Assembly (NCBI RefSeq): GCF_003918875.1
Contig: NW_025766181.1
Coordinates: 558,001-622,000 of the forward strand
Origin: Haliotis rubra
Lineage: Eukaryota
Length of the DNA: 64,000 nucleotides
Direction: 5' to 3'
A program made the translations under genes and the position numbers. Positions 7,047 to 55,433 of this stretch are shown piece after piece. Below the pieces are notes generated by a model. That model did not search any database. It had not been told where the DNA came from and saw only the letters and a program-made list of their open reading frames with translations. Numbering within the stretch: the stretch's first letter is position 1; each line of letters begins with the position of its first letter.

Positions 7047-8352
7047 ATGAATACTCTTCAAATTCTCGTAGTTCTTATGGCAGTATGCTGTGCAAGTCAA
7101 GGGAGACATATCCGTAAGTGTAACCAAGTTGACAAATCTGTTATTTGATTTGTGAATTATGCTAAATTATACACGAAACCTAATCGTATTATTCTGCCAT
7201 CGTAAAGTACCTTGTTTTTATGTATGGTTGTTGTGTGTATGTTTAATCCCACAAATAAAACATCAAACATATATAATGATAAAAAAATTCATATTCCCAT
7301 GTAACATAATATTGACCTCTCCGCGAACACCTGTGAGCCATCTCTGTATTTCATTGGTCCATTTATGTGACTTTCACAACTGTTTTGCCCTTTCGCCCAA
7401 TGGATTCTGATTTGGCTGATAATCGAGGCGTTGACTTATGATACTTTCATAAAAGAGCTTCTATTTCCTATGATCTATTTTCTCATGTTTTGTTTGCAGG
7501 TTCCAGGCGTTTTGTAAACCAACCACCATCAGGTACGTTTTATACAAGGTCAAGAAATACAAATGAATATTCTGTCATAAAAGTCGAGCGGGTTTGTCTT
7601 TACGAATACAATAGGTATGCATAATAGGTGATATAGGTGACTAGAGATATACGTGATTACTTTGTCATATTACCTCACAACTTACATGTAACGGTGGGAA
7701 GACTGGTAATACATCATATATTACCCTACCCTACACTACGATATTAAAAGAACAAGGGGTGACGGAATGCTGAATATGATGTGGCTTGTTTGTGGTTCTT
7801 TCAGGTTTATTCCCGCCAGGCAACAATCATCTGGATATCCAAGCGATTATGGCACTCTTGAAGAATCCAATGATGATGAAAGGGCTTGGTCAGGTTAATA
7901 GTCAACAACAACAACAACAACCGCAGCAGCAGCAGCAACAACTAGGAACGGGTCAAATTCCACAAGCCGAAGTGACCCAACATACAAAGAATCAAGGACA
8001 AGTTCAGGGACAGACACCAACACAAAATGGAGGTCACGGTCAGCAAGGTCACACAAACAATGGTCAGACACAACAGGTCCCCGTCCCAGCTCCAGCTGCC
8101 AATACTCTAAAGACTGTCGATCCAATGCAGCAGCTTATGGGGTCTTCAAACATGTTCACCGACCCAATGTTTTTACAATACTTGGCGAGAAGGGTAAACA
8201 TGATGAAGCCCAAATACAGGAGAGGAGACTTTATCCCCCAAAAAGGCCTCTTCCCGGGAGGATATGTGATATCTGCTGATGGTAGTGATGCTGAAGTGAG
8301 GGACATATATGGAAGGTTGCACTCAATTGATGGTGGCATTTTCCAAGCATAA
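7047..8352 (+). CDS. Secreted Gln-rich low-complexity protein, copy 1 (215 aa; exons 7047-7113, 7500-7532, 7805-8352)
   Basis: Splices in frame via GT-AG phase-1 introns: MNTLQILVVLMAVCCASQGRHI-RSRR-FVNQPPSGLFPPG...polyQ...DGSDAEVRDIYGRLHSIDGGIFQA; signal peptide; AATAAA at 8568. Confidence 0.9.
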
Positions 8353-13071: not shown

Positions 13072-14738
13072 ATGAATACTCTTCAAATTCTCGTAGTTCT
13101 TTTGGCAACATGCTGTGCAAGTCAAGGAAGAAATATCCGTAAGTGTTACCAAGTTGACAAATCTGTTGCGCGAATTAATGTTAAAACAAAACCAAATGGT
13201 ATTATTCTGACATCGTACATGTAAAATACCTTGTATTTATGTAGGGTTGTTGTGTATGTGTTTAATGCCGCGAAAGAAACATCATACATTATCCCCATGT
13301 AACATAATATCCCCGTTTACGGGAACACCTGTGTGTCATCACTGAATTTCAGTAGTCCATCAATGTTACTTCCACAACTGTTTTGCTTTTTGCGCCTAAT
13401 GGATTCTGATTTGGCTGATAATCGGCGTTGACTTATAATACATTCATAAAAGAGGTTCTATTTCCTGAGATGATATTTATTCCTGTTCTATTTGCAGGTT
13501 CCAGGCGTTTTGTAAACCAGCCACCACCAGGTACGTTTTATACATGGTCAATACATAAATTGTATATTCTGTCATGAGAATAAGGAAAATTGCGTATCGA
13601 TAATCTAGCGAGTGTACTCGCTGGTGTGGCTTGTCTTTACAAATAATATAGGTGGGTAAAGTGTGATGTAACTTCGTGTTCAAGATTATATCACTCATGT
13701 TACGACGTGCAACCACGTGATTATGTGTACATGACTAGGGCATTTCTGTACTCGTCTACTCTATGCCGGTTTACGACAACGAGCCCTTGGGATTCCTCAT
13801 TCGGACACAGAATACTGACACAGTCCAATGGTACTTTTGTTTAGCCCTAATGCTTCTTAGCCCTAGTACTTGTCGGACAGTCTAGTCTACCTTTAGAGGC
13901 GGTCACTAGAGATGTACGTGATTACTTCGACATATTACCCTTCAGCCTGCATATAACGCCGGGAAAACTGGAAATGTAATAAATTATACAGTGACAATAC
14001 GATATTAAGAGAACATAGGCATACAGAATGCTGAGTATTGTGTCGCTGTAAAACCTTCTTTGTGGTTCTTCCAGGTTTATTCCCGCCAGGCAACAACCAT
14101 CTCGATATCCGAGCGCTTATGGCACTCTTGAAGAATCCAGTGATGATGAAAGGGTCTGGTCAGGTTAATAGTCAACAGCAACAACAACAGCAGCAGCAAC
14201 AACAGCAACAACAACAACAACAGCAGCAGCAACAACAACTAGGAACGGGTCAAATTCCACAAGCCGAAGTAACTCCTCAATCAGCCCAAAATCAAGGTCA
14301 ACCTCAACCTGAGCCTCTTCCAACCCAGACGAAACCTCAAAACCCGCCACTGACCCAACATACAAAGAATCAAGGACAACTCCAGGGACAGACACCAACA
14401 CAAAATGCAGGTCAAGGTCAGCAAGGTCAAACAAACAATGGTCAGACACAACAGGCCCCTTTCCAGCTCCAACTGCCAATACGCCAAAGACTGTCGATCC
14501 AATGCAGCAGCTTATGGGGTACTCAAACATGTTCACCGACCCAATGTTTTTACAATACTTTCAACAATTCATGAGAAGGGTAGACAGGATGAAGCCCAAA
14601 TACAGGAGAGGAGACTTTATCCCCCCAAAAGGCCTCTTCCCGGGAGGATATGTGATATCTGCTGATGGTAGTGATGCAGAAGTGAGGGACATATATGGAA
14701 AGTTGCACTCAATTGATGGTGGCATTTTCCAAGCATAA
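13072..14738 (+). CDS. Secreted Gln-rich protein, copy 2 (exons 13072-13138, 13498-13530, 14075-14738); 1-bp frameshift in C-run at ~14456-14459
   Basis: Near-identical to copy 3; GCCCCTTT vs GCCCCCTTT splits the last exon into ORFs 14038 and 14502; pseudogene or homopolymer error. Confidence 0.8.
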
Positions 14739-20279: not shown

Positions 20280-21942
20280 ATGAATACTCTTCAAATTCTC
20301 GTAGTTCTTATGGCAACATGCTGTGCAAGTCAAGGAAGAAATATCCGTAAGTGTTACCAAGTTGACAAATTGCGCGAAATAATGTTAAAACAAAACCAAA
20401 TGGTATTATTCTGACATCGTACATGTAAAATACCTTGTATTTATGTAGGGTTGTTGTGTATGTGTTTAATGCCGCGAAAGAAACATCATACATTATCCCC
20501 ATGTAACTTAATATCCCCGTTTACGGGAACACCTGTGTGTCATCACTGAATTTCAGTAGTCCATTAATGTTACTTCCACAACTGTTTTGCCTTTTGCGCC
20601 TAATGGATTTTGATTTGGCTGATAATCGGCGTTGACTTATAATACATTCATAAAAGAGGTTCTATTTCCTGAGATGATTTTATTCCTGTTCTATTTGCAG
20701 GTTCCAGGCGTTTTGTAAACCAGCCACCACCAGGTACGTTTTATACATGGTCAAGATATCAAATGTATATTCTGTCATGAGAATAAGGAAAATTGCGTAT
20801 CGATAATCGAGCGAGTGTACTCGTTGGTGTGGCTTGTCTTTACAAATAATATAGGTGGGTAAAGTGTGATGTAACTTCGTGTTCAAGATTAACTCACTCA
20901 TGTTACGACGTGCAACCACGTGATTATGTGTACATGACTAGGGCATTTCTGTACTCGTCTACTCTATGCCGGTTTACGACAGCGACCCCTTGGGATACCT
21001 CATTCGGACACAGAATACTGACACAGTCCAATGGTACTTTTGTTTAGCCCTAATGCTTCTTAGCCCTAGTACTTGTCGGACAGTCTAGTCTACCTTTAGA
21101 GGCGGTCACTAGAGATGTACGTGATTACTTCGACATATTACCCTTCAGCCTGCATATAACGCCGGGAAAACTGGAAATGTAATAAATTATACAGTGACAA
21201 TACGATATTAAAAGAACATAGGCATACAGAATGCTGAGTATTGTGTCGCTGTAAAACCTTCTTTGTGGTTCTTCCAGGTTTATTCCCGCCAGGCAACAAC
21301 CATCTCGATATCCGAGCGCTTATGGCACTCTTGAAGAATCCAGTGATGATGAAAGGGTCTGGTCAGGTTAATAGTCAACAGCAACAACAACAGCAGCAGC
21401 AACAACAGCAACAACAACAACAACAGCAGCAGCAACAACAACTAGGAACGGGTCAAATTCCACAAGCCGAAGTAACTCCTCAATCAGCCCAAAATCAAGG
21501 TCAACCTCAACCTGAGCCTCTTCCTAACCAGACGAAACCTCAAAACCCGCCACTGACCCAACATACAAAGAATCAAGGACAAGTTCAGGGACAGACACCA
21601 ACACAAAATGCAGGTCAAGGTCAGCAAGGTCAAACAAACAATGGTCAGACACAACAGGCCCCCTTTCCAGCTCCAACTGCCAATACGCCAAAGACTGTCG
21701 ATCCAATGCAGCAGCGTATGGGGTACTCAAACATGTTCACCGACCCAATGTTTTTACAATACTTTCAACAATTCATGAGAAGGGTAGACAGGATGAAGCC
21801 CAAATACAGGAGAGGAGACTTTATCCCCCCAAAAGGCCTCTTCCCGGGAGGATATGTGATATCTGCTGATGGTAGTGATGCAGAAGTGAGGGACATATAT
21901 GGAAAGTTGCACTCAATTGATGGTGGCATTTTCCAAGCATAA
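20280..21942 (+). CDS. Secreted Gln-rich protein, copy 3 (254 aa; exons 20280-20346, 20701-20733, 21278-21942)
   Basis: Intact spliced frame: signal peptide, RSRR, Q22 tract, Q/P/T/N linker, C-terminal DGSDA module. Confidence 0.9.
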
Positions 21943-28330: not shown

Positions 28331-30330
28331 TCAATATTTTGAATAAGAATGTTCATGGTTTTTGCTGAAACACGGTACAGGGTCTAACTGACCCTTTCTG
28401 TAGTCCCCACTCTGCTTGTCAGTCTGTTTAGACTTCAAATGTTCACAGATCTTGCTTCCATGCTGTGTAAGTTTCCTTTTCACAACACTGGGGCTTTTCT
28501 GATAGTCTTTGTGATAGGTAGCCTCCTTGTCCATTTGTTCAAGTGACCGCACAGCTCGGCTTGAAAGTTTCACCCCAGAATGGTCGCACTTGTCGATTGC
28601 TGATGTCCCAGGGCCATTGTTGAGCCTGTGAATTGTGGAAGAAGCCCTCCCAATCATGTTCCTTGAAAAGTTTACATTCTTTGGCAAAGAAATACTCAGT
28701 GATCGATTGGCAGCTTCACATTTCTGTGTGTCTGTGTACAGTTTCATTTGTTCCACCACTTCTACACTTAACTTCATTTTGAGAATTTCATTAAGCAAGT
28801 GTTTATCATTGTCATCCATATTGAAATGAGTGATACTGTTGCAGCCGAGGAACATGGATCGCTGCCACCAGCTGTTTGTTACACCTCCTCTACACACAAC
28901 TGAGTACCGGGCACACCTGGAGCAGTCGCCGCTGTAGCACTTGAGGGTTGCTTCGAGCACTCTTGGTAAGATACTACGAAGTGTTTTCATGTCACCTGCA
29001 TGATCTTTCATGAGTTCTTTTAGTATCAGGCTGCACCGTGCTTTGACATCCTGGCTCAGCACCTTCTTTGCTTCCATTTTATGTGTACGAGTAGTGCCGG
29101 GGAACATATCTGGGTTAAAATCAGCTCTGTAACATTGTCGGAACTGTCCTTGAGCCAAGTGGGTTGGGTCAGCTAGCCTTTGCACCTTCCACATTGGGTC
29201 CAACACTTTGAGAGCTTTGTCTACTCCATCTGCAGACTTCGAATCCCCATCGGTTGTGGCATACTTTATGAGTACACCCTGTAGTGCGAGCTGATTACCA
29301 ATGTCCTCTCCCATTTTGAACTCAGAGAATGGAGTGAAGGCCGACATGTTCGCAGTACAGTCTGGGTGCCCCCCCTGGACATTTCACATCCATGCCTTTT
29401 CCTTTCAGCCAGGCACCAGTCCAGCAGAGCTTATTCTGGAATGACGCACTGACGATGAACTTCTTGTCAGTAACAGTTTCGCAGGCGATGCCGATTGCTT
29501 GTGATGCATTCTGCCCTGGCTTCTTCCTGCTTGCTATTGTTGTCGAGTTGTATCGGCCATCCATAGCAATGTTCATCTCACACGGCTCAGTACCCCTCTT
29601 TCGATTAACTTCCTTCACTAACTCCACCTTTTCTGCCATATCCTTAGTGTTAAGTTCAGTTACAGCCTTAGCCACCTTGTTGGAGGTCCTCTGCATACTG
29701 CTCCTGCATGGGGGTGGAATGTCCATGTTGGCCATCAGTAACCTCGCTCTCGTATTTCCTATAGGTGTGTCCTGTAGACCCAAGGCAAGTCCCACGTTGG
29801 GTGCTGCTGGGTTTGGCCCAGGTTTACCCGTCTCGATTTCTTTGTATAACTTCATTTCAGGTGCTACAAAGTCACATGTGACACATTTCAGTGTTATTTT
29901 CCAGCATGCTCCCCATTTTCTCTCCTTGGCTATCTGCAGCTGAGGGTCGTCACAGTCACTGGATGTTGACCAATGCAGTCGCAGAGCTGTGTTCCATGCT
30001 TCGGCCACCTTTTCATTGTCGACTAGTCGCATACCCTCCAAGTCATCTTTGCTTGACTCTTGTTTCAGGTCATGCTTGCTCGTTGAAGTGGGACGCAGCA
30101 GCCTCACTGAAGTAGAGATGCCATCGCAGTCAGGTGTTGACAGCCCAGTGCCATCCAGCCTTGACTTGGTGACCAGGGGAGAAGTCTTCTGCACTCAACC
30201 TAGTGACTGTCCTGGGTATCTGGGGTGGAGCGGCACTTTCCGACTCTTCCGATTCAAGGGTGAGACCTTTGTTCCAGGGAGTATGGCCTTTGCTGAACTG
30301 TGACTTGATTCTCTTGCGGTCGCCTTTCAT
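28331..30330 (-). CDS. Kolobok-type DDD/E transposase, copy 2 (2 frameshifts, ~30177 and ~29371)
   Basis: Near-identical to copy 1; ORFs 30130, 29322 and 28331 join into one protein. Confidence 0.8.
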
Positions 30331-31060
30331 CGTGATTGTGTCGAATAGAACTAATGAGCTCTGAGCACAGCATGTACTTATATATCCCATCTCTGTGTGT
30401 TGTCACTGGCACTGACAAGCAGGTATATGTATTAGAAAATGTATTGGAAACTCAAGACATACACATGTCTTGCGCCACTGGTGTAAATCGCAGTTGAGCC
30501 ATACACACCTACTGACACTTTGTCGCGTATTGGCCAGGTGTCAGGTGAGAGTGGACATGCTTGGTGACTTCGCTGCACTTGATTGGCTGTACTCAGCTAC
30601 TTGTGCAGCCAATCAATTTAACGAGGAAAGATAGGGCTTTCTAATGAATACAAATTTAACAGTTTCAATTTTCATTTTTGTTGAAAAATATGAACTTTAA
30701 TGGAATTATTTTAGTATAAAATGCATGTATGTATATAAAAATAGAGAAAAAATGAAAAAAATGCTTTAATGGACTGAAACCATTGTCCTTTGATAGCACA
30801 TGCAATAACAAAGAGGAACACTTGATGTTTTTGTCAATTTCCACCTGGTTATGGAGTTATAGACAAATTAGAATTGTGTTTGAAATTAATTCATGCCCAA
30901 AATTAACACTCAAATGCCAGAGATACAGCATGGAGTAAAAGCAGTATAAGTCAAGTTGTGTATGAGTTAGGGCTTTCAAATTTTCTGTGAGCCTTACATT
31001 GTGTCTGGGCTTAGTATTGATTAAGTTATATTTAATTTGCAGACTTTTGGTGTCCTGATA

Positions 31061-31510
31061 GGCCTCAGACCACAGTTACCCCCTTAACTTTTACCATGAC
31101 CGGAAGTAAAATATGAGAATATAGTGCCTTGTTTAAATGGGCTGTTCTGCTTGTGCTGATTTTTTCAGGGTGACTTGTGATAGCTTAAATGAAAGGTAAG
31201 ACATTGTACTTTATTGCAAAATTTTTTTGGGTCCACAATCTACTCATGGTATTGACACCAGCCTTCCTTGATTTGACCCCAAGTTCAAGGCTGTCTGGTG
31301 TGTTTCGGCTCGTAACTTCCGGTGACCATTGTTTACAGTGGATACAGCAAAATCGACATGGTCGATCCAGGCTCATATTTTGCCGATTAAGTGACAAGTG
31401 GCAGGTTGGTGAGCATGCAACAGGAGAACAGCCTACGACCGATATTAATTATGGTGCACTGGCATGTCACTGTAGATAGCAAAGAAGGAAAATAATTGTG
31501 GTCTGAGGCC
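31061..31510 (+). repeat. Right long terminal direct repeat (450 bp)
   Basis: Same sequence and TIRs as left LTDR apart from homopolymer lengths. Confidence 0.95.
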
Positions 31511-33176
31511 TTATCATGCTTGAAAATGTTGTTCCGGTGACGTGCGAAATGTGGTATGACGTAGGGTCTGAGAGCTTGGTCGATGTAACGCACTGCTGTG
31601 ATGCCACCTCCTCTCCCTGGACCAAGGGTTCTGGAACACCACAGAACCCACTCTCTGGTTCAGGCCTATTCCACCCCATACCATGATACTTGCACCTTCC
31701 CATGAGCCTCTTTGGTCCGAGTAACGCTGGCCACGTCGACGCCATATTATTGTTCTGCCATCTGCAGTTGATACGCAGTACCGACTCTCATCTGTGAACA
31801 GAACAGTTCTCTATTGCCTGTATCGCCAGTTTTGGTGTTGTAAGGCAAACTGTAGACGTTCACACCGATGACGAGGAGTGAGGATAGGTCCACGGTAAGG
31901 TCTACGGCATTGGAGGTCCCCGCTGTTAAGACGTCGGCGTACTGTATCAGTACTGATTGGTCTTCCGTGTGTTCCCACTGTTTGGCGTGCTGTTTCGGAT
32001 GCCTGCATGAAGGGATTCTGTACATGCTGTCGCACAGCATGGCAGTCTTGTCGTCTTGTGGTCACCCTTGGTCCGCCAGTACGGGGGCGATCATTTGTCG
32101 TGCTGGTGGCCCGGAAACGTTGCTGCAGCCTGTAGATGGTCCGAACGTTGACCTTGAAGTGATTGGCAACGGCTTGTGCAGTGTGGCCAGCTTCAAGTCT
32201 TCCTAGCGCCTGGTTCCTCTCGGCTATCATGAGTCGCGGCATCCTGCTGACGTTGTTTCAACCAGGTTTGTGGGGGCGCATTTTAAAGGGCTGGTCCTTG
32301 TGAACAGCCCGCGCAGCATGAGTTGCATGAAACGTTTTGGAAGGAATGTCTTTGCTCAAGTAAAGTTGGAGATGTTGTCAAAATATACAATCAATACAAT
32401 ATACATTAAATTCCAAACTGACGTTTCTTTTGCTGCTTAGTATTTATCCCACTGAGAAACTCCACAAGGCCAAATCACGGCCAGGGTAACGACACTTCAT
32501 ATATGAAATTTTAAGTATCATTGATGAAAGTTTCTTCTACGCATATTGAAGGATCATCATTCGTTGATGTAAAGAATATGTTAACTTTGTCTCCAGCATG
32601 CTTCTATAGTATCGAGACTCTATCCAAAATAAATATCCAAGAACACTTGTCGTCATTGAAATAACAAACACAATATGTGTACAATATAACAATTGTGCCA
32701 AAACGTTAATTCAACACATGCTTATTCCAATACCAATAATACTGGTTTCAGTTCATTCCTTGTTTTAAGTTACATACTAACTTTGATAACGACGGTAAAT
32801 GACCGTACTAGCATATTCAGCGGACATGGCCGCTTCGCTTTTTCTTGTTACGAAGTGCTGCGTAGACACATTCCTTGATTGCTGTAGACAATCTAACAAC
32901 ACGCACGTATTTCCTTTGTGGATGTGTAAATACATAACCGAGAAATAGTGAGCAACTGACATCTTATCTAAACGTTTAAGATAAAGTAGGCCAGCTATGT
33001 CAGGTGCAAACAATTGTTTAAACAAGAGGAATGAGAGTTTGCTTCTTTACTCATACACTTCCAGAAAACCACTACAAATAGACCAGAACATACATGTATT
33101 TAAGTTGTTATTAACTACAATAACTAAACATTTCAGCTTTGCTGGCTGAGGCCAACTGGCCAGTTAGCATTCCGCA

Positions 33177-34380
33177 CAGGAAAGCAAAAGTAACTGTGCA
33201 TAACATAAAACTACATAAAATAAAAATTATTTGAAAAGTAATTTAAATAACCCTAAATAAACATGCAGCAAGCACTTTGTTATCACGTATCGCCCGTAGC
33301 ACGTGCACTTTGTGCACAATGAACTTACTTACTTTTTGTATGGTTTTTGACACCTGAAGTTCACACACCTGATATTGAAATTTGAAGAGCGGTTAATTAT
33401 TCTCTTGCCTCTGAATGTTATGGGTACCGCGTTAATTTCAACCTTGCTACGGTTTACAGAAAATCAGCGTCTCTGTTCCTTGGGTTTACTGGAGACTCGA
33501 ATGGCCTAAAATGAAGTGGCCAGACATTTTGGTGTCCATCGAAACACGTCTTTATGGAAACGTTTTCAACATAATGGGGAACACGAGAGATTTGCCTCAG
33601 ACCGGCCATCCACGCGACGCGTGACGTCACGTCAGCAAGACAACAACATTCGGCTGACCCATATATGGAATCGAGTCCAGACTGCCAGATTGTCTGCTCG
33701 GAACATACCTGGAATACGACCAATCAGTTCCAGAACTGTACGGAACCGACTGAGGGAGCACAACATCGGGCCCCGACGGCTTGCAATTCAATTTTGCTCC
33801 AACGCCACAGACAGACACGTCGTGCCTGGTGCAGACATCATCTATTTTACAGGAGACCAGATTGGGATGGTGTTTTGTTCACTGACGAGTTGCGCTTTCA
33901 TCTGGATAGCTCAGATGGCAGGGCAAGGGTGTACAGACGGCGAGATGAACGGTATGCTGACTTGTGCATTATTCAACGTTGACAGCGTTATGGAATGGGG
34001 AGTCATCACATCTCAAGGTCGGACGAAACTTGTCATGTTCAATAGCAATCCGACAGGTCTGCGATATCTTCATAAGATATCCCCGTCCCCATGTCGCTAC
34101 GTTCACAGATTTCCTGAGACAGCAGAACATTGCGGTACACTCCTGGCCAAATGTTTCTCCGGAGCTGTCCCCTTTTGGGTACGCTTGGGCTGAAATGGTG
34201 CGTCAAGCCCAATATCATGGAACAACATTCTCCAAGCTTTCTTAAATCGCTTAGTGTCGTTGTCAAACCTGCATCAACGCCAATGGTGGAGAAACACGAT
34301 TACTGAATTTGCGAAGTGACACCACATCTCTTCAAGGCCAAGTGTCAATTCCTAATTATCTTGTCAACAGTTAAACAGTG
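33177..34380 (+). mobile_element. Decayed Tc1-like transposon B, copy 3
   Basis: VARHFGVHRNT, DWDGVLFTDELRFHL, WPNVSPELSP. Confidence 0.8.
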
Positions 34381-35102
34381 AAAGTGATGGAAAGCACAAA
34401 ACAATCATGTTAGTTTTTGCATTAAAAAATTGGCATTGTAAACAACATTGCACAGGTATTTTACTGAATGTTGTCTAACGCCGCACTCTGGACCAAACGT
34501 TCCCGTGAGAAGGGTGGGGGGTTAAAGGGCGGGGGGATACAGAAGTTAATATGTTATATTCTGAAGATTTGGTAATGGTATCTGATCTATCATCAAACAA
34601 AGGAAATAAACTCTGCTCTCAGAATACACTTTTAAACGGAAATGGCCATCAAAATTATGAAAGCGTTTGAATGGAAATTAGAAGTGATACACATAATGTT
34701 TGTCTGTCTAACGCCGCACTTTATATGAAGGCGGTGTGTAAATAATCGGATCTGGACCAAACGATCCAGTGACATTTATGGATACAAAAGTTGGTATGTA
34801 AACATTTTCCCCTTTAGCATAATCGAATTAAATAAAATTGTCGCACATATGCACACAGTGTATTAATATGGAGAACACTGGTCTTAGACAGGGTTGTGAC
34901 GTTACTCCAGAGCTTTTAGGCCGCTGGTGATAAATTGTTTACCAGCATCAATCTGACAGAATGTGGTGAGCGTAGGCGAGAAGATGTCTTTTCGTGAGGT
35001 CAAGTATGGTACAGCGGTGTCTGAATCACATTAACAGTGCATAAATTGTGGCAGTGACGTGTTTTGCGCAGAGTTTTACGTCGTCACTTACCGATATGTT
35101 GG

Positions 35103-35185
35103 TATAAAAGGGGATACGAGCGATCCTATCTTCAGTCCACCAGTATTTGCCTTCGTATTGCGGCAGCATTTCTGCAGACTCACAT
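35103..35185 (+). promoter_or_regulatory. TATA/Inr + non-coding exon 1, copy 4
   Basis: TATAAAAG 35103, TCAGT Inr (A at 35134), GTAAGT donor 35186. Confidence 0.7.
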
Positions 35186-35756
35186 GTAAGTACATTTTCG
35201 TTGGCTTTTCATAATACATATCCATGCTAATATCACATGTTTTGTAGAATATCCTTAAAATTAAACCGACAATTATTTCCATTTCAAGTGTCACAAGTGA
35301 AAATACGTTCATGCTAGCTAGGAACACGGATCAAGGAATGTATCTGAGCATGTAACATTTCGTATGAATGTTCGCAAGAAATATAGTAATACTGAGAAAG
35401 TTTGTCCCTCAGTTGCAGACACAATGAACATTTGAGTATTAACAGAAAGCCACCCCAAAGTTTCTTGCATCTGTTTCTTTTATTAAGGTTTGTTATTAAT
35501 GTTAAAATTCCACTTATATTTGTTTTACTGGAACGGAGGGTGTTAAAAAGTCTCCAGTTCGTGTCAGTGTGTAATCGAAGACTTAATAACCAAGAGTACA
35601 CCATATCAACTCGTAAAAGTTCTACGTAAAATCACATTCCATACCTTTCTTTACAACATAGACTGCGATCCTAGTTGATGAAACACCCCACACGTATGAT
35701 GGATTTACATAACAAATTTGTTTGTTTGTAAAAATCAATCATTTTCTTCCAGCAAA

Positions 35757-37390
35757 ATGAATACTCTTCAAATTCTCGTAGTTCTTTTGGCAACATGCTG
35801 TGCAAGTCAAGGAAGAAATATCCGTAAGTGTTACCAAGTTGTGTCTGTTATCTGTTGCGTGAATTAATGTTAAAACAAAACCTAATGGTATTCTGACATC
35901 GTAGATGCAAAATACCTTGTATTTATGTAGGGTTGTTGTGTATGTGTTTAATGCCGCGAAAGAAACATCATACATTATCCCCATGTAACATAATATCCCC
36001 GTTTACGGGAACACCTGTGTGTCATCACTGAATTTCAGTAGTCCATTAATGTTACTTCCACAACTGTTTTGCCTTTTGCGCCTAATGGATTCTGATTTGG
36101 CTGATAATCGGCGTTGACTTATAATACATTCATAAAAGAGGTTCTATTTCCTGAGATGTATTCATTCCTGTTCTATTTGCAGGTTCCAGGCGTTTTGTAA
36201 ACCAGCCACCACCAGGTACGTTTTGTACATGGTCAAGACATAAAATGTATATTCTGTCATGAGAGTGTACTCGTTGGTGTGGCTTGTCTTTACAAATAAT
36301 ATAGGTGGGTAAAGTGTGATGTAATTTCGTGTTCAAGATTAACTCACTCATGTTACGACGTGCAACCACGTGATTATGTGTAAATGACTAGGGCATTTCA
36401 GTACTCGTCTACTCTATGCCGGTTTACGACAGCGAGCCCTTGGGATGCCTCATTCGGACACAGAATACTGACACAGTCGAACGGTACTTTTTTAGCCCTA
36501 GTACTTGTTAGCCCTAGTACTTGTCGGGCAGTCTAGTCTACCTTCAGAGGCGGTCACTAGAGATGTACATGATTACTTCGACATATTACCCTTCAGCCTG
36601 CATCTAACGTCGGGAAAACCGTTAATGTAGTAAAGTATACAGTGACAATACGATATTAAAAGAACATCAGCATACAGAATGCTGAGTATTGTGTCGCTGT
36701 AAAACCTTCTTTGTGGTTCTTTCAGATTTATTCCCGCCAGGCAACAACCATCTCGATATCCGAGCGCTTATGGCACTCTTGAAGAATCCAGTGATGATGA
36801 AAGGGTCTGGTCAGGTTAATAGTCAACAGCAACAACAACAGCAGCAGCAACAACAGCAACAACAACAACAACAGCAGCAGCAGCAACAACTAGGAACGGG
36901 TCAAATTCCACAAGCCGAAGTAACTCCTCAATCAGCCCAAAATCAAGGTCAACCTCAACCTGAGCCTCTTCCAACCCAGACGAAACCTCAAAACCCGCCA
37001 CTGACCCAACATACAAAGAATCAAGGACAAGTTCAGGGACAGACACCAACACAAAATGCAGGTCAAGGTCAGCAAGGTCAAACAAACAATGGTCAGACAC
37101 AACAGGTCCCCGTCCCAGCTCCAACTGTTAATACTCCAAAGACTGTCGATCCAATGCAGCAGTTTATGGGGTACTCAAACATGTTCACTGACCCAATGTT
37201 TTTACAATACTTTCAACAATTCATGAGAAGGGTAGACATGATGAAGCCCAAATACAGGAGAGGAGACTTTGTCCCCCCAAAAGGCCTCTTCCCGGGAGGA
37301 TATGTGATATCTGCTGATGGTAGTGATGCAGAAGTAAGGGACATATATGGAAAGTTGCACTCAATTGATGGTGGCGTTTTCCAAGCATAA
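35757..37390 (+). CDS. Secreted Gln-rich protein, copy 4 (254 aa; exons 35757-35823, 36183-36215, 36726-37390)
   Basis: Intact spliced frame, same architecture as copies 1-3. Confidence 0.9.
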
Positions 37391-44814: not shown

Positions 44815-46981
44815 ATGACGTACTGGCGTTTCATCTTGTGTACTCTGGCGTTCTGTTGTGGGGCGCATGCGCAGCATGTTAGTGAAGCACGTACGTATTT
44901 TTTAAATTGTTTTGTTGCTTTGATGAGCCATCGAACGCTCATTCCGTAAGCTGTTTTCCCCAAGGAAGTGGCCGGCTGGTCATCACAACATTAGTTGTTT
45001 GATCAAAGTTATATGTGACAAATGAAATATTCTCATGGCAACTGAAAAAGGTCACGCTTCACTACCAACAAATGGCTTGACTGGCAAATGATATGTTTGT
45101 AGAAGAATGCTCAGAGTTCCTCATATCAAGGGAGATTTCTTAATTACAAAGTTATGAGACATTTATATCATTTTCAGGCGATTTCTAATACGTTAAATGT
45201 ATTGCTATTAAATATTTCAAATGAATTCATCTTTTATATCACCATCCCACTGTGGAAATATAAAAACACACTTATATTCAATGAGCGGTTGTTATTAAAC
45301 GTGATGATGTGGTAGAATAACATTTTCAGCGTCCAGTGCGTAAGGCTGCATATTTTGACCTTTCCAATGACATTTAATGAACTTAAAATTAATGACGCTA
45401 AATGTTAAATGATTTCTGCAATTCTGATTGCAAAAAGGTGCAGTTTCTTGAATACAATACTGATCTTGGATATCGCTGGTATGATAACTAATATAAGTAC
45501 GAGAAGGGACCCACGCACAAACTCAGGACAACAAAATACCATTTAGTTGCGTATTGAAAGAAACTGGTCCGTTCGTGTAAGGATTTACAGGGGACAGTTC
45601 ATGAAAATGAAGTAACGATTTCCAAAGCTAAGTAAATATGGTGTATTTATTTTGAAGGTATTCGCTCGCTCCTGCCCCAAAGCGTTGCCTTTAAACTGCT
45701 TCTTCTGAAACCACCCGCACCCAGCGGCAGCTTGTTGCCACAAAGAAAAGCCCCAACAAGCACACAGGCAGGATCCTTCAACGGAGGTCCGTTAATTCGA
45801 TCTGATCCACGACTTGGCTCTGGTTTGGTGCACCCTCTACTTGATCCTAATTATGGTAGCAACCAGTTCAATGGCGTTGGTGGTTACTCCGAGACCATCT
45901 CACCAACAGGTTTTCCCGAAGGTATATCTGGATCTGGCGCATTTGCTGATACTTCCGGAGGGTCTTTGGGTTTCACAGGAAGTAATCCGCTTGGTTTGCC
46001 TGGTATTGATTCAACCGGGCTTCATGGGAGTTTCATGGGGTCCGGGGGTTTACTTGGCGACATGACAGGAGCTGGGAATGCTGGGCTAGCCCTTGAACAA
46101 CTTTCAGGTGGATTTGGACAAGACCCGGTTGGCGATATATTCGGGACATCGGGACAGAGTGGAGGTCTTCTTGGACTGGACTTGACACCGGGTAGTCTTA
46201 CAAGTGTTTTTCCTGGTGGAGCGGACACACTAGCTGGACAACCTGAGAATTCACAGGGATTTGGCATGTCTATGGGGCAGCCTGGCGATTTTCTTGGTAC
46301 AGGTATGGGACATGTAGAGTAGAGTTTTGAGAGTAAGGCATTAATGTACCTTCCCGGTGCGGGTTAATATTTTGGTCACGTGGGTCTATCGGTTGGCAAA
46401 TCTTGGCTTGAAAGCTCACCTTTAGATGTTCATAGACTTCGAGTTTCTAAGTTTCGATGTTATCACTTTGAACCGAACATAATTTTGACCATTATTACGA
46501 TTTCAGAGCTGCAGAACGTTAACAGTGGAATGGGAATGAATATGTTTCCGGAAAGTATTCCAACTTCTCCACCTCAAACACAAATGGTCCCTACAAAACC
46601 TCCGACGAACACTGGTCTGCCGCAAGGGCTTACCTCGGGATCCGTAATGGCTCCGGTAGACAGGAAACAAATACAAAACAATGTTCGAGTTCCGTCGCAA
46701 AAATGCAGCCGAGTTTACCAAAATCTCGTCAAAATCCAACTGGAAAAGGGCCTGCTGTGGTCGGTATCGCAAATGGACAAATTCAAATGCCCCGTCGCCC
46801 AGCACCAATCGGAGTTGGACCACCTATCATTCAAGTAGGAACCATACTTCCCCCAAGTGCTGTGCTGCCTGATGGTGGAGTGGTGGTTCGTGTTGATGGC
46901 TCTGATGCAACCGTTCAGTCTCCCGGTGGAGTAGAAACGACCGTGGATGGAACTGACTTCAGCCAAGAATTGGTTGGCTGA
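44815..46981 (+). CDS. Secreted Gly/Pro-rich protein with C-terminal DGSDA module (exons 44815-44890, 45658-46302, 46507-46981); apparent 1-bp deletion in A5 run 46699-46703
   Basis: Signal peptide MTYWRFILCTLAFCCGAHA; phase-1 GT-AG introns join ORFs 45732 and 46380; adding one A gives PSQKMQPSLP and enters ORF 46703; AATAAA at 47214. Confidence 0.8.
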
Positions 46982-49830: not shown

Positions 49831-52800
49831 CTAAACACTGGAGCCAATAAAATCTGGTGCTCCACGATTGCCTCCATCTACCATGAAAGATCCAGCATTG
49901 GTGAAGCGAGAATTGCTGAAAGACAGACCATTCATTACAGATAACTCAGGTTGGTTAGGGTCCATTTGGGAAGGTGATGGTCCAGTCCCATCAGCAACGA
50001 TACGATCATTTCGGATTCGAACAGAATTTCCGTTTCTGTTTGCATTGCTATCTAATGGTGTAGAGCGATATTCGTTGTTGCTACCGTTCTGTCCGTTTAG
50101 CCGTGTCATTGTTCCAGCATCCATCATGACGGGTCCGTTCATGTCTGTGTATCCACGGGCATTCATGAAAGATTCGACATTCATATCCATCATTGATTGC
50201 CCAGACCGATTCGTATCAAATTGGGAAGGAGATCTTTCAGCATTATTTGTGTTGCGATTGATACTTGAAGGTGAATCGGCCCATCTTGACATGGGCATGT
50301 TAGATGGAGAGTCTCTGGTAAAGTCCATCATGTTCCTATTCGGACCAGATAACCCTACTGAGTCTTGCAAACCAAGATATCCTAAGTCCACCATCATAGA
50401 TCCAGCTGGATCTGTGAAGCCACGATTATCCATGAACGATTGCTCGTTCCGATCCATTTCTGGTGATCCTGATGGCGAAAAGACATTGCTATTCGTTGAT
50501 GAAAGCCTTCGTCCATTTCTAGAGGTCGATCGGTCAATATCCATGGGAGTTTGAGAAGTACCATCAAACATTGGATTCGACATATCGTTATTGCTGCCTA
50601 CACTGGATGATACGCCCATTTCGGCTGGTGCACTGACCAGTGGAACTTGTTCTATGGCCAAACCCAACATATCCAGATCGGCCTGATTCAAGTTGTTCAT
50701 GCGTGATCGACGTACATCCATTCGTCCGTCAAGAGTATCAAAGGATGTCGCAAATCCGCCAGGCCTGTTACCTCGACCACCAGAAATAGATGATCCACTT
50801 GGGTCCATCATACCAATAATATGTTGACTTGATGGGTTCGAGTCCTGTGCAGCCGGCCGGCTAAAGTCTCGGATCATTGACATGCTTCCATCAATATTAT
50901 TCAAGGAATTTGCAAACCCATCCATATTGTTCACCGTTTGCCCCTGGCCTCCAATCACAAAAGACCCTGTAGAATCCATCATGCCAATCATATTTTGTCC
51001 CAAATGTTGGAAATCTTGTGCAGCTGATCCTCCTATATTTCCCGTCATACCTCCGTCAGCAGTATTGAAGGAATTAGAAAACCCGTCAAGACTGTTAGTC
51101 ATTTGGCCTTGACCGCTAATCAGTGAAGAATCTTCAGCACCCATCACACTCATCAAATCATTTCCTTTTTGCTGAAAGTTCTTCGACATTGAATCTCTCA
51201 TACTTCCGGCCTGATTTCTGTCAATAGTATTTATGGATGTTGCAAATCCATCAATGTTGTTCCTCATTTGCCCTCGACCGCCAATTGTATTCAAGGAATT
51301 TGCAAACCCATCCATATTGTTCACCGTTTGCCCCTGGCCTCCAATCACAAAAGACCCTGTAGAATCCATCATGCCAATCATATTTTGTCCCAAATGTTGG
51401 AAATCTTGTGCAGCTGATCCTCCTATATTTCCCGTCATACCTCCGTCAGCAGTATTGAAGGAATTAGAAAACCCGTCAAGACTGTTAGTCATTTGGCCTT
51501 GACCGCTAATCAGTGAAGAATCTGCAGCACCCATCACACTCATCAAATCATTTCCTTTTTGCTGAAAGTTCTTCGACATTGAATCTCCCATATTTTCGGC
51601 CTGATTTCTGTCAATAGTATTTATGGATGTTGCAAATCCATCATTGTTGTTCCTCATTTGCCCTCGACCGCCAATCATAGAAGACCCTGTTGCATCCATC
51701 ATACCCAAAATATTCTGTCCCAACTGTTGAAAATCTTGTCCAGTTGATCCACCCATATTTCCTGTCACCCTTCTGTCCATAGCATCGAAGGAATTTGAAA
51801 ACCCATCAAGATTGTTCATCCTTTGACCATCCATCATTCCCATAAAATCGTTTCCTTGTTGCTGAAAGTCCTGTGCATTCGATCCACCCGCATTTCTGGT
51901 AAGTGGTCCATCTATAGTAGTTATGGATCCAAATCTGCCAAGTTTGTTCCTCATTTGCCCTCGGCCGTCATTCGTAGCAGAAGGTGTAGCATCCATCATG
52001 GTCATCATGTTTTGTCCGACTTGTTGGAAATCTTGTGCTGTTGACCCACCAATGTTTCCGTTCACAGTCCCACCTAAAGTATCCATGGATGGCGCAAATC
52101 TGTCAAGTTTGTTCCTCATGTCCCCAATCACGGAAGACCCGGAAGCATCCATCATACCGAGAATAGTTTGCCCTTGTTGCTGAAAGTCCTGTGCCGCTGA
52201 TCTGCTATCGGCCATCATTTCAGCCATGGGGTTTTGAAGATTTGGTGGTAGTTCGGCTGCATTTCCAATGGGGTCTGTTCTTCCAAATCCAACTGATTGC
52301 GGCTCGTTCATATATAACTGGTCTAAGGTATCGACATTGTTGACGCTTTGTCTGTCGGAATGCGGTACCGTGCCGTCCTGTCGACTGACCACCCATGACG
52401 GTTGCATGGGCATCGCTTGCCTTCCAGAAGGAACAAAGCTTATCTCTAGCACCTTAGCACCTCCCAGCATGTTGCTTGTTTCAGCGGCTAATATATCTGG
52501 TTCGGGCGTTGGGGAGAAGTTTGTATTCCCAGCATCCTGCAACGTTGGATTCCTAACAGCCACTTGATCACGCAGAGATGCCTGATTGCGAAGAGGACTT
52601 TGGTCACGACGAGGAACCTCATTACGGGGAGATGTCTGTTCACGGAGAGAGTTTTGATCACGTGGAGATGCTTGATTTCGACGGGAACCTTGTTCACGAC
52701 GGGAACCTCGATCATTGGAAGCTGCTTGCTGACGGAGAGTTGTTTGTTGTTCACGCTGAGACACTTGACTGCGGGGTGCTTGGTTACGAAGAGATGCTTG

Positions 52801-55433
52801 AGTTCGACGAGAAACTTGATCATTGGGAAATGATTGCTCACGAAGCGTTGTCTGATCACGCTGAGTTGCTTGGTTTCGACGCGATGCTTGATTTCGACTA
52901 GAACCTTGATCAAGACGAGAAGCCTGGTCATTTGGAAATGATTGCTGACGGACAGTTGTTTGTTGATCACGCTGAGACACTTGGTTGCGGGCTGCTTGGT
53001 TACGGAAAGTGGCTTGATCACGAGGAGAATTTGTTTGATCGCGAGGAAAACTTGTTTGATCACGACGGAATGTTTGATCTCCAGCAGATGCTTGATCCCG
53101 TTGAGGCCCTTGGTCACGAGATGTTTGATCACGACGAGAAGTTTGATCACGGGGAGATGTTTGATCACGGCGGGGAGCCTGATCACCATTAGACATGAAG
53201 GTGGTATTTTGTAGCCGAGTCATTTCCTTGGAAACGCGGGCATTTCCTTCTTGAGGACGCAGATTGTCCATTGATGCCGTGTTGATCTGCTCTGCTGACT
53301 CCATGTTTGACACGGTGGGAGTGTTTGTCTGTTGCATTGTCTGTCCCATGCGCCTTGAATTACGAACCATATTGGGAGTTTGCATCCTCTGTGTGGTTCG
53401 ACTTGGTGTTGGCATCATTGTCGGTGCTGGCCCTGGTGCTGCCGCGTTTGGAGTGGGTCGTCTCATATTCCGGAAACCACCAGGCTGTCTCGGGTAGAAG
53501 CGGCTACCCTGCTGCCTATTTCCCCCTGTGGGAAAACCTTGTCTAGACATTCTTCCCGGAAACGGCGAGTTGAATGGCCTTCTTCCAAAGCTGCCCCTAA
53601 AACTGTTGGGCCGACCTGAAAAAAACATTACAGGAACATTACTTAAAGTAATGCGGACACCATGCTGAACATTTGTCAGGAAATGGGAATCAGCCATTCT
53701 ACTGAGTAAGAGCATTTACATTTCTTCCAGACTCAACCTCTCCCTGGACTTATTGGCTAACATCAAACGCCAAAACGTGTAATTTGTTGTGGGATATTAT
53801 AGCGTTTCCCGAATGTGCTGAAATCTTGTGGTTTTTTAAGAAGAATCACATAACGTACCCATATCTCCCATGTGGGGAGGAAAGGGAAATCCAGGGGGGA
53901 ACGGCATTGGTCCAGCTTGTCGTCTGTGTCCTGAAATATAAGCGTGGATATTTGTGTGGATATTTGTTTTCATAACGGGAGAGACTCAGGTCACACAATT
54001 AGCTGCAGCACACACTATCTGATATGAGATAAAGAAGTCAGGCTGTGATGAGACGGAACTGACAACACTTGATGTTTGTTGTTGTTTTTGTTGTTGTTGA
54101 TTAACGTCGCGCTCAGCAATATTCCAGCTATATGGCGGTAGTCTGTAAATAATCGAGTCTGGACCAGACAATACAGTGTTCAACAACATGAACAAGTCAG
54201 CGAGCCTGACCACCCGATCTCGTAACTCGCCGCTTACGACAAGGATAGGTTACCTAAGATCAATTCTAAACCGGATTTTCACGGGTACCACAACACTTAA
54301 GACTGACCAATACACCTCGGAGAGTGCGGGTAAAACATATTACATATTGTTCAACGCGTCCAAAACATATATGCCCCTTAAATCAAATTGTATGGCCTCT
54401 TACTAATTAATTACACTACTGCCATGTTATGGAAACTATACAACTCTTCACGAATATTAGAAATGTGTGGGAAAAGAAAGTATATGGACGGTGTCCATTT
54501 TTTAATTAATAACTGCAACGTATGTTGTGAAATATGATTAGGTATATTCAACCTTCGCACATTCCAGCAAAAGTTTCTAGAACGTATCAGTTGGCTGGGT
54601 AATTTGAGGAAAACAGGACTCGATAACCATACCAGTTAAAATATTGATATCGTTTGATATGCAATGATAGCTACCATATCGTATTTAAATATATGCTGAA
54701 AAATAAATTCGTCATTCTCTTAACCATTTAACAACTATGATTCTCGATAACGTTTGGTTGCAACAGTATACTTCAACTCACGATGATGGTCTTCAGCTAA
54801 CTCTCCTCCAGAGGTTTGGGATAACATGTCTGCTTTGCCAGTCGCTGAAGAGAAAAGAACATATTGTCAGTGCTTTTGTCAAGTTCAGCCGAAGTGCTGT
54901 AAAATAAGTATACATCCGTGTTTGATGGGACTAAATATGTGACGTACAGTCGATGGCGATATATATTTGAGTCCTAGCTTACTTATCAGATAGACTAATA
55001 TATCGGATACTTTCAAACATTTACTAATTCTACAGATAATCCTTATATTGGCGTTTACTTGATCCTTGAAGTCGATTCACATGTTAAAATAGATCAACAT
55101 AGTTGAAATGATAAAAGAACAAAGATAAAATGCTAAAATAACATAGACCTAGTTGAAATGGAACGTACATTTATAAATAAATATACAAGTAAAACCTATC
55201 GATTTTTCAGGAATATTTTCTATCTCAACCTAGCTAACAAATAATAAGGATACTAAAACCCAAACAATACTGATGTTTACGTACTAGGTGTATGAACATA
55301 TACAGTCTATCTGTAATATTAAATGAAGTCAATCAGATAATTGTTCTAATCTATGAGTGTACTCACCATAAGTTGTCATACTTCCCAGAACGACCACGCC
55401 GAGTACCGTGAAAATCGTGTTTAATTTCGTCAT
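49831..55433 (-). CDS. Large secreted repetitive low-complexity protein, 1328 aa (exons 55433-55367, 54844-54782, 53930-53859, 53615-49831)
   Basis: MTKLNTIFTVLGVVVLGSMTTYA signal peptide; three phase-1 GT-AG introns splice in frame; RHRR site; RDQxS hexapeptide block; ~55-aa QDFQQ repeats; upstream donor at 56050. Confidence 0.88.
54071..54289 (-). mobile_element. SINE family B in intron
   Basis: Reverse match to 63537 copy, (CAA)n tail, TSD ACAACACTT at 54062-54070 and 54290-54298. Confidence 0.8.

What the first reader, a model, noticed from the sequence alone, without database searches (positions are those of the whole stretch)
46835..46981. Unnamed ~45-aa 'DGSDA' C-terminal module shared by otherwise unrelated neighbouring proteins
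Seen: RGDFIPPKGLFP-GGYVISADGSDAEVRDIYGKLHSIDGGIF (copies 1-4) aligns with VGTILPPSAVLPDGGVVVRVDGSDATVQSPGGVETTVDGTDF (gene at 44815), giving G-x2-hPP-x4-P-x0/1-GG-x-V-x3-DGSDA-x-V-x4-G-x5-DG-x2-F. The upstream regions are compositionally different (polyQ versus Gly-rich). I do not recognise the motif. Inference: a small Cys-free beta-meander acting as an assembly or ion-binding cap on disordered secreted proteins, defining a family.
Basis: partly seen in the sequence, partly recalled or inferred. Interest (0 to 1): 0.8.

Follow-up and report, generated by a model that had tools for sequence, protein, structure and literature searches.

The report
Abalone shell-protein family's shared C-terminal domain
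The shared "DGSDA" tail is real: it is the conserved, probably folded C-terminal domain of a small abalone-only family of mantle-secreted shell-matrix proteins that sit side by side in the genome, not a module shared by unrelated genes, and no database or searchable paper describes it.

Summary
Four tandem polyQ genes and the Gly-rich gene at 44815 end in the same ~48-residue Cys-free module (Smith-Waterman 76 against shuffles 22±4.4).

The carriers are not unrelated. In other Haliotis genomes the same cluster holds four paralogue types on one strand: a 158-aa gene, a Pro-rich 255-aa gene, polyQ and the Gly-rich gene. Each has a signal-peptide exon closed by a phase-1 intron, a fast-changing low-complexity middle and this tail.

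A profile search of 1.84 billion representative proteins found only Haliotis members. Pfam and PDB sequence searches found nothing.

Supplementary tables of the 2018 H. laevigata shell proteome hold MS/MS peptides from three of the four types. These include the module peptide and the exact C-terminal peptide of the polyQ protein. So these are mantle-made shell-matrix proteins that keep the tail.

AlphaFold gives a small beta sheet or barrel (pLDDT up to 90). It resembles SH3/Tudor/KOW barrels only weakly (Z≈5). The core is two 17-residue hairpin units.

Caveat: in this assembly a 4-nt deletion next to an A5 run puts the Gly-rich gene's module out of frame. This may be an assembly error or a pseudogene. 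The module's function (anchoring, assembly or Ca binding) is inferred, not shown.

The parts
46835..46981 (+). C-terminal module of the Gly-rich family member ('gene 5'), stop codon included
   Evidence: Translation. It is 81% identical to the H. cracherodii orthologue with dN/dS 0.38. A local family profile scores 88 bits.
44815..46981 (+). Gene 5. Exon 1 is 44815-44890 (signal peptide, GTACGT donor, phase 1). Exon 2 is 45658-46302 (Gly-rich, phase 1). Exon 3 is 46507-46981.
   Evidence: Exon borders were transferred from P0005 mapped on L003 and from tblastn of P0005 on the window. Splice sites were read.
46697..46703 (+). Frame break in gene 5: a 4-nt gap relative to H. cracherodii, next to an A5 run (46699-46703). 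Upstream the exon reads in the frame that stops at 46838. Downstream the module frame is open.
   Evidence: DNA alignment; frames. An independent 143-nt DNA contig carries one extra letter somewhere in 46643-46784 (record 13).
7047..8352 (+). PolyQ gene copy 1. Exons are 7047-7113, 7500-7532 and 7805-8352; the module is 8206-8349. The Q run is short (6).
13072..14738 (+). PolyQ gene copy 2. Exons are 13072-13138, 13498-13530 and 14075-14738; the module is 14592-14735. It is frame-shifted by a C4-versus-C5 run at about 14455.
20280..21942 (+). PolyQ gene copy 3. Exons are 20280-20346, 20701-20733 and 21278-21942; the module is 21796-21939. The gene is intact, with a Q run of 22.
35757..37390 (+). 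PolyQ gene copy 4. Exons are 35757-35823, 36183-36215 and 36726-37390; the module is 37244-37387. The gene is intact. Its C-terminal 11 residues equal the MS/MS peptide found in shell matrix.

Best explanation
The stretch encodes the C-terminal domain of one member of a Haliotis-restricted tandem family of shell-matrix proteins made by the mantle.

Every member has three parts:
- a signal peptide on its own exon, closed by a phase-1 intron;
- a rapidly evolving low-complexity middle (Q-rich, P-rich, G-rich or Q/S/Y-rich);
- a conserved ~48-residue Cys-free tail. The tail is a Pro-containing lead-in followed by two 17-residue hairpin units, each ending in a DG-x-D turn. It is predicted to fold into a small SH3-like beta sheet or barrel.

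The family grew by tandem duplication, and the disordered middles diverged through repeat expansion. This genome has amplified the polyQ member to four copies.

Shown here: homology, family membership, cluster synteny, mantle transcription, presence of three paralogue types in shell matrix, retention of the tail in the mature polyQ protein, purifying selection on the tail, and the beta prediction.

Inferred (about 0.4): the tail is the one folded, interaction-competent end of these proteins. It would dock them to another matrix component or to each other, while the disordered part occupies the organic-mineral interface. The conserved Asp residues at the two turns may add Ca2+ or carbonate-surface contact.

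The copy at 46835-46981 is out of frame in this assembly. Most likely that is a one-base error or polymorphism in the A run; otherwise this gene is a recent pseudogene.
For: Family and homology:
- The profile search of 1.84e9 representatives found three clear clusters, all Haliotis, at E 3e-25, 1e-14 and 2e-14.
- A fourth paralogue lies in H. cracherodii locus L007 (47 bits; sequence).
- Pairwise BLASTP gives 1e-7 to 6e-9.

Cluster:
- H. rufescens has Pro-rich, polyQ, Gly-rich in order.
- H. cracherodii has the 158-aa gene, Pro-rich, polyQ, Gly-rich, then the orthologue of the window's 1294-aa ORF.

Architecture:
- Phase-1 introns follow the signal peptides.
- The signal peptides share an A-x-CC motif in three of the four types.
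- PolyQ and Pro-rich also share a TDP...KP region upstream of the module.

Protein evidence from the supplements of Mann et al. 2018 (PMC6003135):
- GLFPGGYVISADGSDAEVR and the C-terminal LHSIDGGVFQA are assigned to idb_28907 and idb_36084.
- idb_16318, the Pro-rich orthologue, is in Table 1 and in the set of 80 major proteins.
- FPGGGIVTAGDGR(DGTVVNR) is assigned to idb_54301, the orthologue of the 158-aa gene.
- The idb entries come from a mantle transcriptome.

Selection: dN/dS is 0.16 for the polyQ module and 0.38 for the Gly-rich module, at dS 0.35-0.40. Identity over the whole aligned polyQ protein is about 64%, and 67% over the Gly-rich exon 2, both with many indels.

Fold:
- AF2 gives pLDDT 79-90 across the polyQ module, with strands at 71-77, 80-85, 90-94 and 97-99.
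- The Gly-rich module gives the same strand pattern at pLDDT 68-83.
- An internal period of 17 stands out (sum score 64 against a null of 25±9).
Against: - No experiment addresses what the tail binds. The fold matches are at background level (Z≈5).
- The alignments behind the models are shallow: 12 rows from four subfamilies.
- Gene 5 was not seen in the shell proteome, and no RNA run covering it was available.
- As assembled, gene 5 cannot make the module.
- Signal-peptide similarity between subfamilies is not significant on its own (E 0.1-0.5), and phase-1 introns after signal peptides are common.
- A 48-column profile has limited reach, so absence outside Haliotis is not proof.
Confidence: 0.75

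Rival explanations
1. The module is a mobile unit acquired independently by unrelated neighbouring genes through exon shuffling.
For: The middles share no detectable similarity, and their composition differs completely.
Against: The module never has its own exon; it is the end of the large last exon in all four types. All carriers lie in one same-strand tandem cluster conserved in three genomes. Signal-peptide exons, intron phase and an A-x-CC motif are shared. PolyQ and Pro-rich homology runs about 40 residues upstream of the module. Rapid turnover of low-complexity regions explains the unlike middles.
Confidence: 0.08
2. The tail is primarily a Ca2+- or mineral-binding cap. The conserved Asp residues of the two DG-x-D turns would coordinate calcium or bind aragonite or calcite faces.
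For: Four conserved acidic positions sit at predicted turns. The proteins are occluded in CaCO3 shell.
Against: There is no match to EF-hand, DxDxDG or RTX GGxGxDxUx patterns, and no Pfam hit at E up to 10. The best PDB sequence hits are at chance level: uL6 at E 0.2 and RsaA at E 1.2. One paralogue has DGRDG, and the module's net charge is modest.
Confidence: 0.25
3. The copy at 46835-46981 is a dead end. Gene 5 in this genome is a recent pseudogene, so this particular stretch is not translated.
For: A 4-nt deletion relative to H. cracherodii breaks the frame, and the exon-3 frame stops at 46838. The listed indels of a deep contig from another DNA sample show none at this site.
Against: The downstream frame is fully open and under constraint. 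The break abuts an A5 run. The other frameshift in the window, in polyQ copy 2, is also a homopolymer length difference, which suggests assembly indel errors. A 143-nt independent contig has one extra letter within 46643-46784. The gap total of the deep contig leaves one undisplayed inserted letter. A GT...AG interval at 46656-46708 (53 nt) would also restore the frame if spliced.
Confidence: 0.3
4. The tail is a sorting or processing propeptide that is removed before the protein reaches the shell.
For: It sits at the extreme C-terminus and is preceded by basic residues in polyQ (K-x-K-Y-R-R).
Against: The exact C-terminal peptide and the module peptide of the polyQ protein were recovered from several shell-matrix preparations. 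Module peptides of idb_54301 were recovered too.
Confidence: 0.03
5. The resemblance is chance or compositional.
For: The module is short and rich in G, D and V.
Against: z=12 against shuffles. The significant similarity is transitive across four subfamilies and at least five species. The position at the C-terminus and the spacing are conserved.
Confidence: 0.01

Closest known systems
Uncharacterised H. laevigata shell-proteome entries idb_28907/idb_36084, idb_16318 and idb_54301 (Mann et al. 2018, Proteome Sci 16:11, PMC6003135)
   Same: They are orthologues of the polyQ, Pro-rich and 158-aa paralogues. Peptides match the window's polyQ module exactly. The transcripts come from mantle and the proteins from shell.
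   Different: The paper lists them as uncharacterised. Only idb_16318 is in the main text, as a table row marked 'P/V'. It does not mention a shared C-terminal domain, a gene family or a cluster. The Gly-rich member is absent from that proteome.
RefSeq models XP_071110958.1 (H. cracherodii) and XP_046351676.2 (H. rufescens), plus the polyQ and Pro-rich models P0001-P0004
   Same: They are direct orthologues with the same exon structure and the same tail.
   Different: They carry misleading automatic names (collagen alpha-1b-like, austinoid cluster protein W-like, POU domain 6 factor 2-like, DDB_G0288537) and no domain annotation.
Shematrin-type bivalve shell-matrix families (own knowledge; not tested here)
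   Same: It is the same kind of thing: a lineage-restricted, tandemly expanded secreted family with conserved ends and a hypervariable low-complexity middle.
   Different: There is no sequence relation. The shematrin C-terminus is a short basic motif, not a ~48-residue predicted beta domain.
SH3-like small beta-barrels (Tudor, KOW, SH3)
   Same: Both AF2 models align to them at rmsd 2.0-2.4 Å over 41-49 residues, and they fill the top of both lists.
   Different: Z≈5 is within the background of the method. There is no sequence similarity. Those domains are intracellular nucleic-acid or peptide binders.
Orphan metagenome protein P0007 (443 aa; Logan, JGI and ENA contigs)
   Same: It has tandem 17-residue units of the type G-x-T-A-S-I-DG-S-D-A-T, with the same period and turn as the module's two units (hhalign probability 74%, E 3e-5).
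   Different: It is a long array rather than two units, and it lacks the Pro lead-in. Its organism is unknown and it has no relatives. The relationship is unproven.

Membership tests
Haliotis DGSDA-tail shell-matrix family (unnamed; defined here) | C-terminal module with the invariant G...P-GG-x-V-x3-DG-x-D-x2-V-x4-G-x4/5-DG pattern, ending the protein | tested here: met
   A local profile scores 88 bits for 46523-46978 and 106-115 bits for the four polyQ copies.
Haliotis DGSDA-tail shell-matrix family (unnamed; defined here) | Signal peptide on a separate first exon closed by a phase-1 intron, followed by a low-complexity region | tested here: met
   Window exon 1 is 44815-44890 and the polyQ first exons all have GTAAGT donors. 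Phases come from orthologue mapping. No signal-peptide predictor was available, so the call is by inspection.
Haliotis DGSDA-tail shell-matrix family (unnamed; defined here) | Place in the conserved same-strand cluster | tested here: met
   The order polyQ, Gly-rich gene, 1294-aa minus-strand ORF is seen in the window and in H. cracherodii. H. rufescens has Pro-rich, polyQ, Gly-rich.
Haliotis DGSDA-tail shell-matrix family (unnamed; defined here) | Uninterrupted reading frame from signal peptide to module | tested here: not met
   This is met for polyQ copies 1, 3 and 4. It is not met, as assembled, for gene 5 (4-nt gap at 46697/98) or for polyQ copy 2 (C-run at 14455).
Haliotis DGSDA-tail shell-matrix family (unnamed; defined here) | Protein present in shell matrix | tested here: inconclusive
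   PolyQ is supported by exact peptide matches. For gene 5 no peptide was found. Its exon 2 has almost no K or R, so tryptic detection is unlikely.
RTX / beta-roll calcium-binding repeats | Tandem GGxGxDxUx nonapeptides; Pfam HemolysinCabind | tested here: not met
   No Pfam hit at E up to 10. The spacing is 17 with the GG and DG-x-D halves unlike the nonapeptide, by inspection. RsaA scores E 1.2.
EF-hand / DxDxDG calcium loops | D-x-D-x-D-G loop with a downstream acidic ligand | tested here: not met
   The sequence is (V/A/G)-D-G-(S/R)-D-(A/G), with no DxDxDG. There is no Pfam hit.
SH3-like small beta-barrel fold | Five-stranded barrel superposable on Tudor, KOW or SH3 domains well above background | tested here: inconclusive
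   Z is 5.1-5.2 with rmsd 2.0-2.4 Å. Foldseek E is at least 0.025. The tool's own background is Z 7-8.
H. asinina glutamine-rich shell protein QRP (CLC_253-like) | Sequence identity to QRP or CLC_253 | tested here: not met
   CLC_253 (QRP-like) is listed among the major proteins in Table 1, and the paper states the 80 major proteins are collected in Additional file 28. That file holds a single DGSDA, which belongs to idb_16318. So the QRP-like entry lacks the tail. This is an indirect test; CLC_253 was not read directly in the file, and the QRP sequence itself was not compared.

The most novel reading that the evidence does not exclude
The tail is a previously undescribed extracellular small beta-barrel domain, born in the abalone lineage by duplication of a 17-residue DG-turn hairpin. 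It would serve as the common docking or self-assembly handle that recruits a set of otherwise unrelated-looking disordered proteins into nacre and prismatic matrix. That would make it a lineage-specific 'address tag' for shell incorporation.
Probability: 0.3. Interest if true: 0.55.

Novelty: new variant of a known kind. Interest (0 to 1): 0.4.

Why it matters
Mollusc shell-matrix proteins are mostly orphan, disordered and hard to relate to one another. Mann et al. 2018 ask outright whether such proteins share true homology.

Here three catalogued 'uncharacterised' abalone shell proteins plus a fourth uncatalogued paralogue turn out to be one tandem gene family, recognisable only by a conserved tail. 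This gives:
- a concrete example of how low-complexity matrix proteins diversify, with fixed ends and free middles;
- a small domain that can be expressed, for testing how such proteins are recruited into nacre;
- corrected annotation for misnamed RefSeq models.

It is useful to biomineralisation specialists but not a surprise in kind.

Tried and rejected
- Pfam on all window pieces and on full-length orthologues gave nothing.
- PDB sequence searches with a single sequence and with a profile gave nothing below E 0.2.
- Foldseek against PDB for both models gave nothing below E 0.025.
- RNA evidence: the run search returned only DNA-like contigs and tiny unindexed runs. The laid contigs run through the introns, so there is no transcript information.
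- I first proposed a 53-nt intron at 46656-46708 to join the frames. Orthologue models read straight through that interval, so I demoted it.
- The polyQ protein is not the 24-Q prismatic protein idb_20008, which is a different, longer protein.
- H. asinina shell paper (PMC2989941): no mention. A full-text search for DGSDA plus abalone found 0 papers.
- The weak profile hits look like chance hairpin or repeat resemblances: Bartonella YadA-like adhesin, an NHL-like repeat protein, a bacterial Ig-like repeat protein and a 98-aa ORF.
- P0007 has no relatives, and its neighbours have no Pfam domains.
- Six test strings from the 1294-aa neighbour ORF were absent from the proteome tables.
- The look-up for P0004's locus failed.
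- I did not search a joined spliced model of gene 5. I used exon references and annotated orthologues instead.
Full report
**What is in the window**

The window is eukaryotic, and earlier notes of this scan call it an abalone genome. My own comparisons agree, since the closest proteins are all from Haliotis.

A six-frame scan finds the string DGSDA five times, all on the + strand and all a few residues before a stop codon. Four hits belong to a tandemly repeated polyQ gene. Repeat spacing is 6.4, 7.2 and 15.4 kb. The fifth hit is the finding, 46835-46981.

**Is the resemblance real?**

Yes.
- The local alignment of the two tails scores 76. Shuffled sequence gives 22.2±4.4, and none of 5000 shuffles exceeds 47 (Gumbel p about 9e-8).
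- Of the C-terminal 52 residues of all 416 open frames in the window, the best unrelated one scores 35.

**Gene models**

Mapping the H. rufescens and H. cracherodii proteins gives three exons for the polyQ gene:
- a 67-nt signal-peptide exon with a GTAAGT donor;
- a 33-nt mini-exon;
- a ~665-nt last exon.

The published H. laevigata transcript places the peptide ALMALLK at residues 47-53. That position fits only if the mini-exon is included.

Copies 1, 3 and 4 are intact. Copy 2 lacks one C in a C5 run at about 14455 and is frame-shifted.

The Gly-rich gene has exon 1 at 44815-44890, exon 2 at 45658-46302 and exon 3 from 46507. Both introns are phase 1, as in the H. cracherodii model.

**The frame problem**

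Exon 3 enters in the frame that runs to a stop at 46838. The module lies in the frame of the ATG at 46703.

The DNA alignment with H. cracherodii shows several indels that are multiples of three, plus one 4-nt gap at 46697/46698 directly before an A5 run. Orthologues in H. cracherodii and H. rufescens, and a genomic contig of a fourth species, read straight through.

So, as assembled, this gene cannot make its tail. Three readings remain.
- **(a) A one-base undercall or polymorphism in the A run.** An extra A gives ...Q-K-M-Q-P..., which aligns with P-K-V-Q-Q in the orthologue.
  - An independent 143-nt DNA contig spans 142 window bases at 46643-46784, so it has one extra letter there.
  - The deep contig's gap total (78) exceeds the listed indels (77) by one inserted letter.
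  - The window's other frameshift is also a homopolymer difference.
- **(b) A recent pseudogene.**
- **(c) Use of a GT...AG interval at 46656-46708.** No orthologue model supports this.

The downstream frame is open and constrained (dN/dS 0.38 at dS 0.40). I put (a) near 0.6, (b) near 0.3 and (c) under 0.1. The site could not be resolved because only one read-laying run was allowed and it returned DNA contigs only.

**The carriers are a family, not unrelated genes**

The H. rufescens locus around the polyQ orthologue also holds two relatives. Upstream is a 255-aa Pro-rich gene ending in the same tail. Downstream is the 415-aa orthologue of the Gly-rich gene.

In H. cracherodii the order on one strand is:
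1. a 158-aa gene;
2. the Pro-rich gene;
3. polyQ;
4. the Gly-rich gene;
5. on the other strand, the orthologue of the window's 1294-aa ORF.

The 158-aa gene also ends in the module (47 bits with the family profile), with DGRDG in place of DGSDA.

All four types have a signal-peptide exon followed by a phase-1 intron (gene borders read). Three of the four signal peptides end in an A-x-CC-x3-(G/A) pattern. PolyQ and the Pro-rich member share a further TDP...KP stretch of about 40 residues upstream of the tail. The module is always the end of the large last exon and never an exon of its own.

This is what tandem duplication followed by repeat-driven divergence of the middles would give. It argues against shuffling of a module among unrelated genes.

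**Distribution**

- A profile of the module, run against 1.84 billion representative proteins, gave three strong clusters (E 3e-25 to 2e-14). All are Haliotis.
- Word-based searches found orthologues only in H. rufescens, H. cracherodii and H. asinina.
- The remaining hits are weak repeat or hairpin resemblances.
- The one worth recording is P0007, an orphan metagenome protein. It is built of tandem 17-residue units with the same DG-S-D-A-T turn and the same period as the module (hhalign probability 74%). It has no relatives of its own.

**What the proteins are**

The supplementary tables of Mann et al. 2018 (PMC6003135), the H. laevigata nacre and prismatic shell proteome, contain several relevant peptides.
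- **PolyQ.** The module peptide GLFPGGYVISADGSDAEVR, its missed-cleavage form, the C-terminal peptide LHSIDGGVFQA (residues 234-244 of a 244-residue entry) and ALMALLK are all assigned to idb_28907 and idb_36084. All of them match the window's polyQ genes exactly; the C-terminal peptide matches copy 4.
- **Pro-rich.** The orthologue is idb_16318. It is listed in Table 1 as an uncharacterised protein with values only in the six columns I read as nacre, and it is among the 80 'major' proteins.
- **158-aa gene.** Peptides FPGGGIVTAGDGR and its extension belong to idb_54301, this gene's orthologue.

The idb entries come from a mantle transcriptome of a laevigata x rubra hybrid. Hence three of the four paralogue types are mantle-expressed and occluded in shell. 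The tail is retained in the mature polyQ protein.

The main text does not discuss these entries together and does not note a shared domain. A full-text search for the motif with 'abalone' found no paper. The Gly-rich member was not detected. Its long exon 2 has almost no Lys or Arg, so trypsin would give few usable peptides.

**Structure**

- AlphaFold2 on the family alignment gives mean pLDDT 68 for the Gly-rich tail, with strands at model residues 31-37, 40-44 and 50-54.
- For the last 100 residues of polyQ it gives pLDDT 79-90 over the module, with strands at 71-77, 80-85, 90-94 and 97-99.
- A self-correlation test shows a clear internal period of 17. The summed score is 64 against a null of 25±9, although the four sequences are related. 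The core is therefore two hairpin units, each with a DG-x-D turn.
- Exhaustive structural comparison puts SH3-like small barrels (Tudor, KOW, SH3) at the top for both models. Z is only about 5 (rmsd 2.0-2.4 Å over 41-49 residues), which the tool states is within background. Foldseek finds nothing significant.
- No Pfam family or PDB sequence matches.

**Selection**

Against the Californian species the module is 81-90% identical (dN/dS 0.16 and 0.38). Identity over the whole aligned polyQ protein is about 64%, and 67% over the Gly-rich exon 2, both with many indels. The Q run varies from 6 to 22 even among the window's own copies.

**Mechanism**

- **Shown:** a secreted shell-matrix family with a constrained, retained, probably folded tail.
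- **Inferred:** the tail is the interaction end. It would dock to a matrix partner or self-associate, while the disordered middle acts at the organic-mineral interface.
- **Secondary reading:** calcium or mineral contact through the conserved turn aspartates is possible, but the tail fits no known Ca-binding pattern.
- **Ruled out for two paralogues:** removal of the tail as a propeptide, because its peptides are found in shell.

**Verdict**

The finding is a real but lineage-restricted domain family within a well-known class, the orphan shell-matrix proteins. The proteins are already catalogued; the family and its domain are not described. Interest is moderate.

Noticed in passing
window 14455 (polyQ copy 2): A one-base shortfall in a C5 run frame-shifts an otherwise near-identical copy of the polyQ gene. 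This is either an assembly homopolymer error or a very recent pseudogene.
   Followed up: partly
window 49831-53715 (- strand): A 1294-aa single-exon low-complexity ORF is conserved at 52-58% identity in the same place and orientation in H. cracherodii (L003 16188-19667). Six test strings from it were absent from the shell-proteome tables. It has no DGSDA tail.
   Followed up: partly
L004 3372-4631; L005 562-1821 (metagenome contigs): The orphan protein P0007/P0015 is built of tandem 17-residue units, ...G-x-T-A-S-I-DG-S-D-A-T-M-T..., with the same period and turn as the module. It has no relatives and no Pfam domain, and it sits on an AT-rich, gene-sparse contig. Its organism is unknown.
   Followed up: partly
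window 8224-8232, 14610-14618, 21814-21822, 37262-37270: The window's polyQ proteins carry an RGD tripeptide at the start of the module. It is KGE in the Californian species and KGD in H. laevigata, so it is probably not a conserved integrin motif.
   Followed up: no
RefSeq names of P0001, P0002, P0005, P0012: Automatic names are composition-driven and misleading: POU domain class 6 factor 2-like, collagen type I alpha 1b-like, austinoid biosynthesis cluster protein W-like, DDB_G0288537.
   Followed up: yes
window 21942-35757: The 15.4-kb spacing between polyQ copies 3 and 4, against about 7.2 kb elsewhere, equals one repeat unit plus the ~8.2-kb transposon noted earlier at 23343-31510. The insertion therefore postdates the duplication.
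   Followed up: no
L002 (H. cracherodii contig position 4.83 Mb): A further polyQ copy (P0002) lies about 400 kb from the main cluster in the opposite orientation, with no other family member within 10 kb.
   Followed up: no
window 61565-62304: A tandem array of a 44-nt unit with about 17 copies.
   Followed up: no
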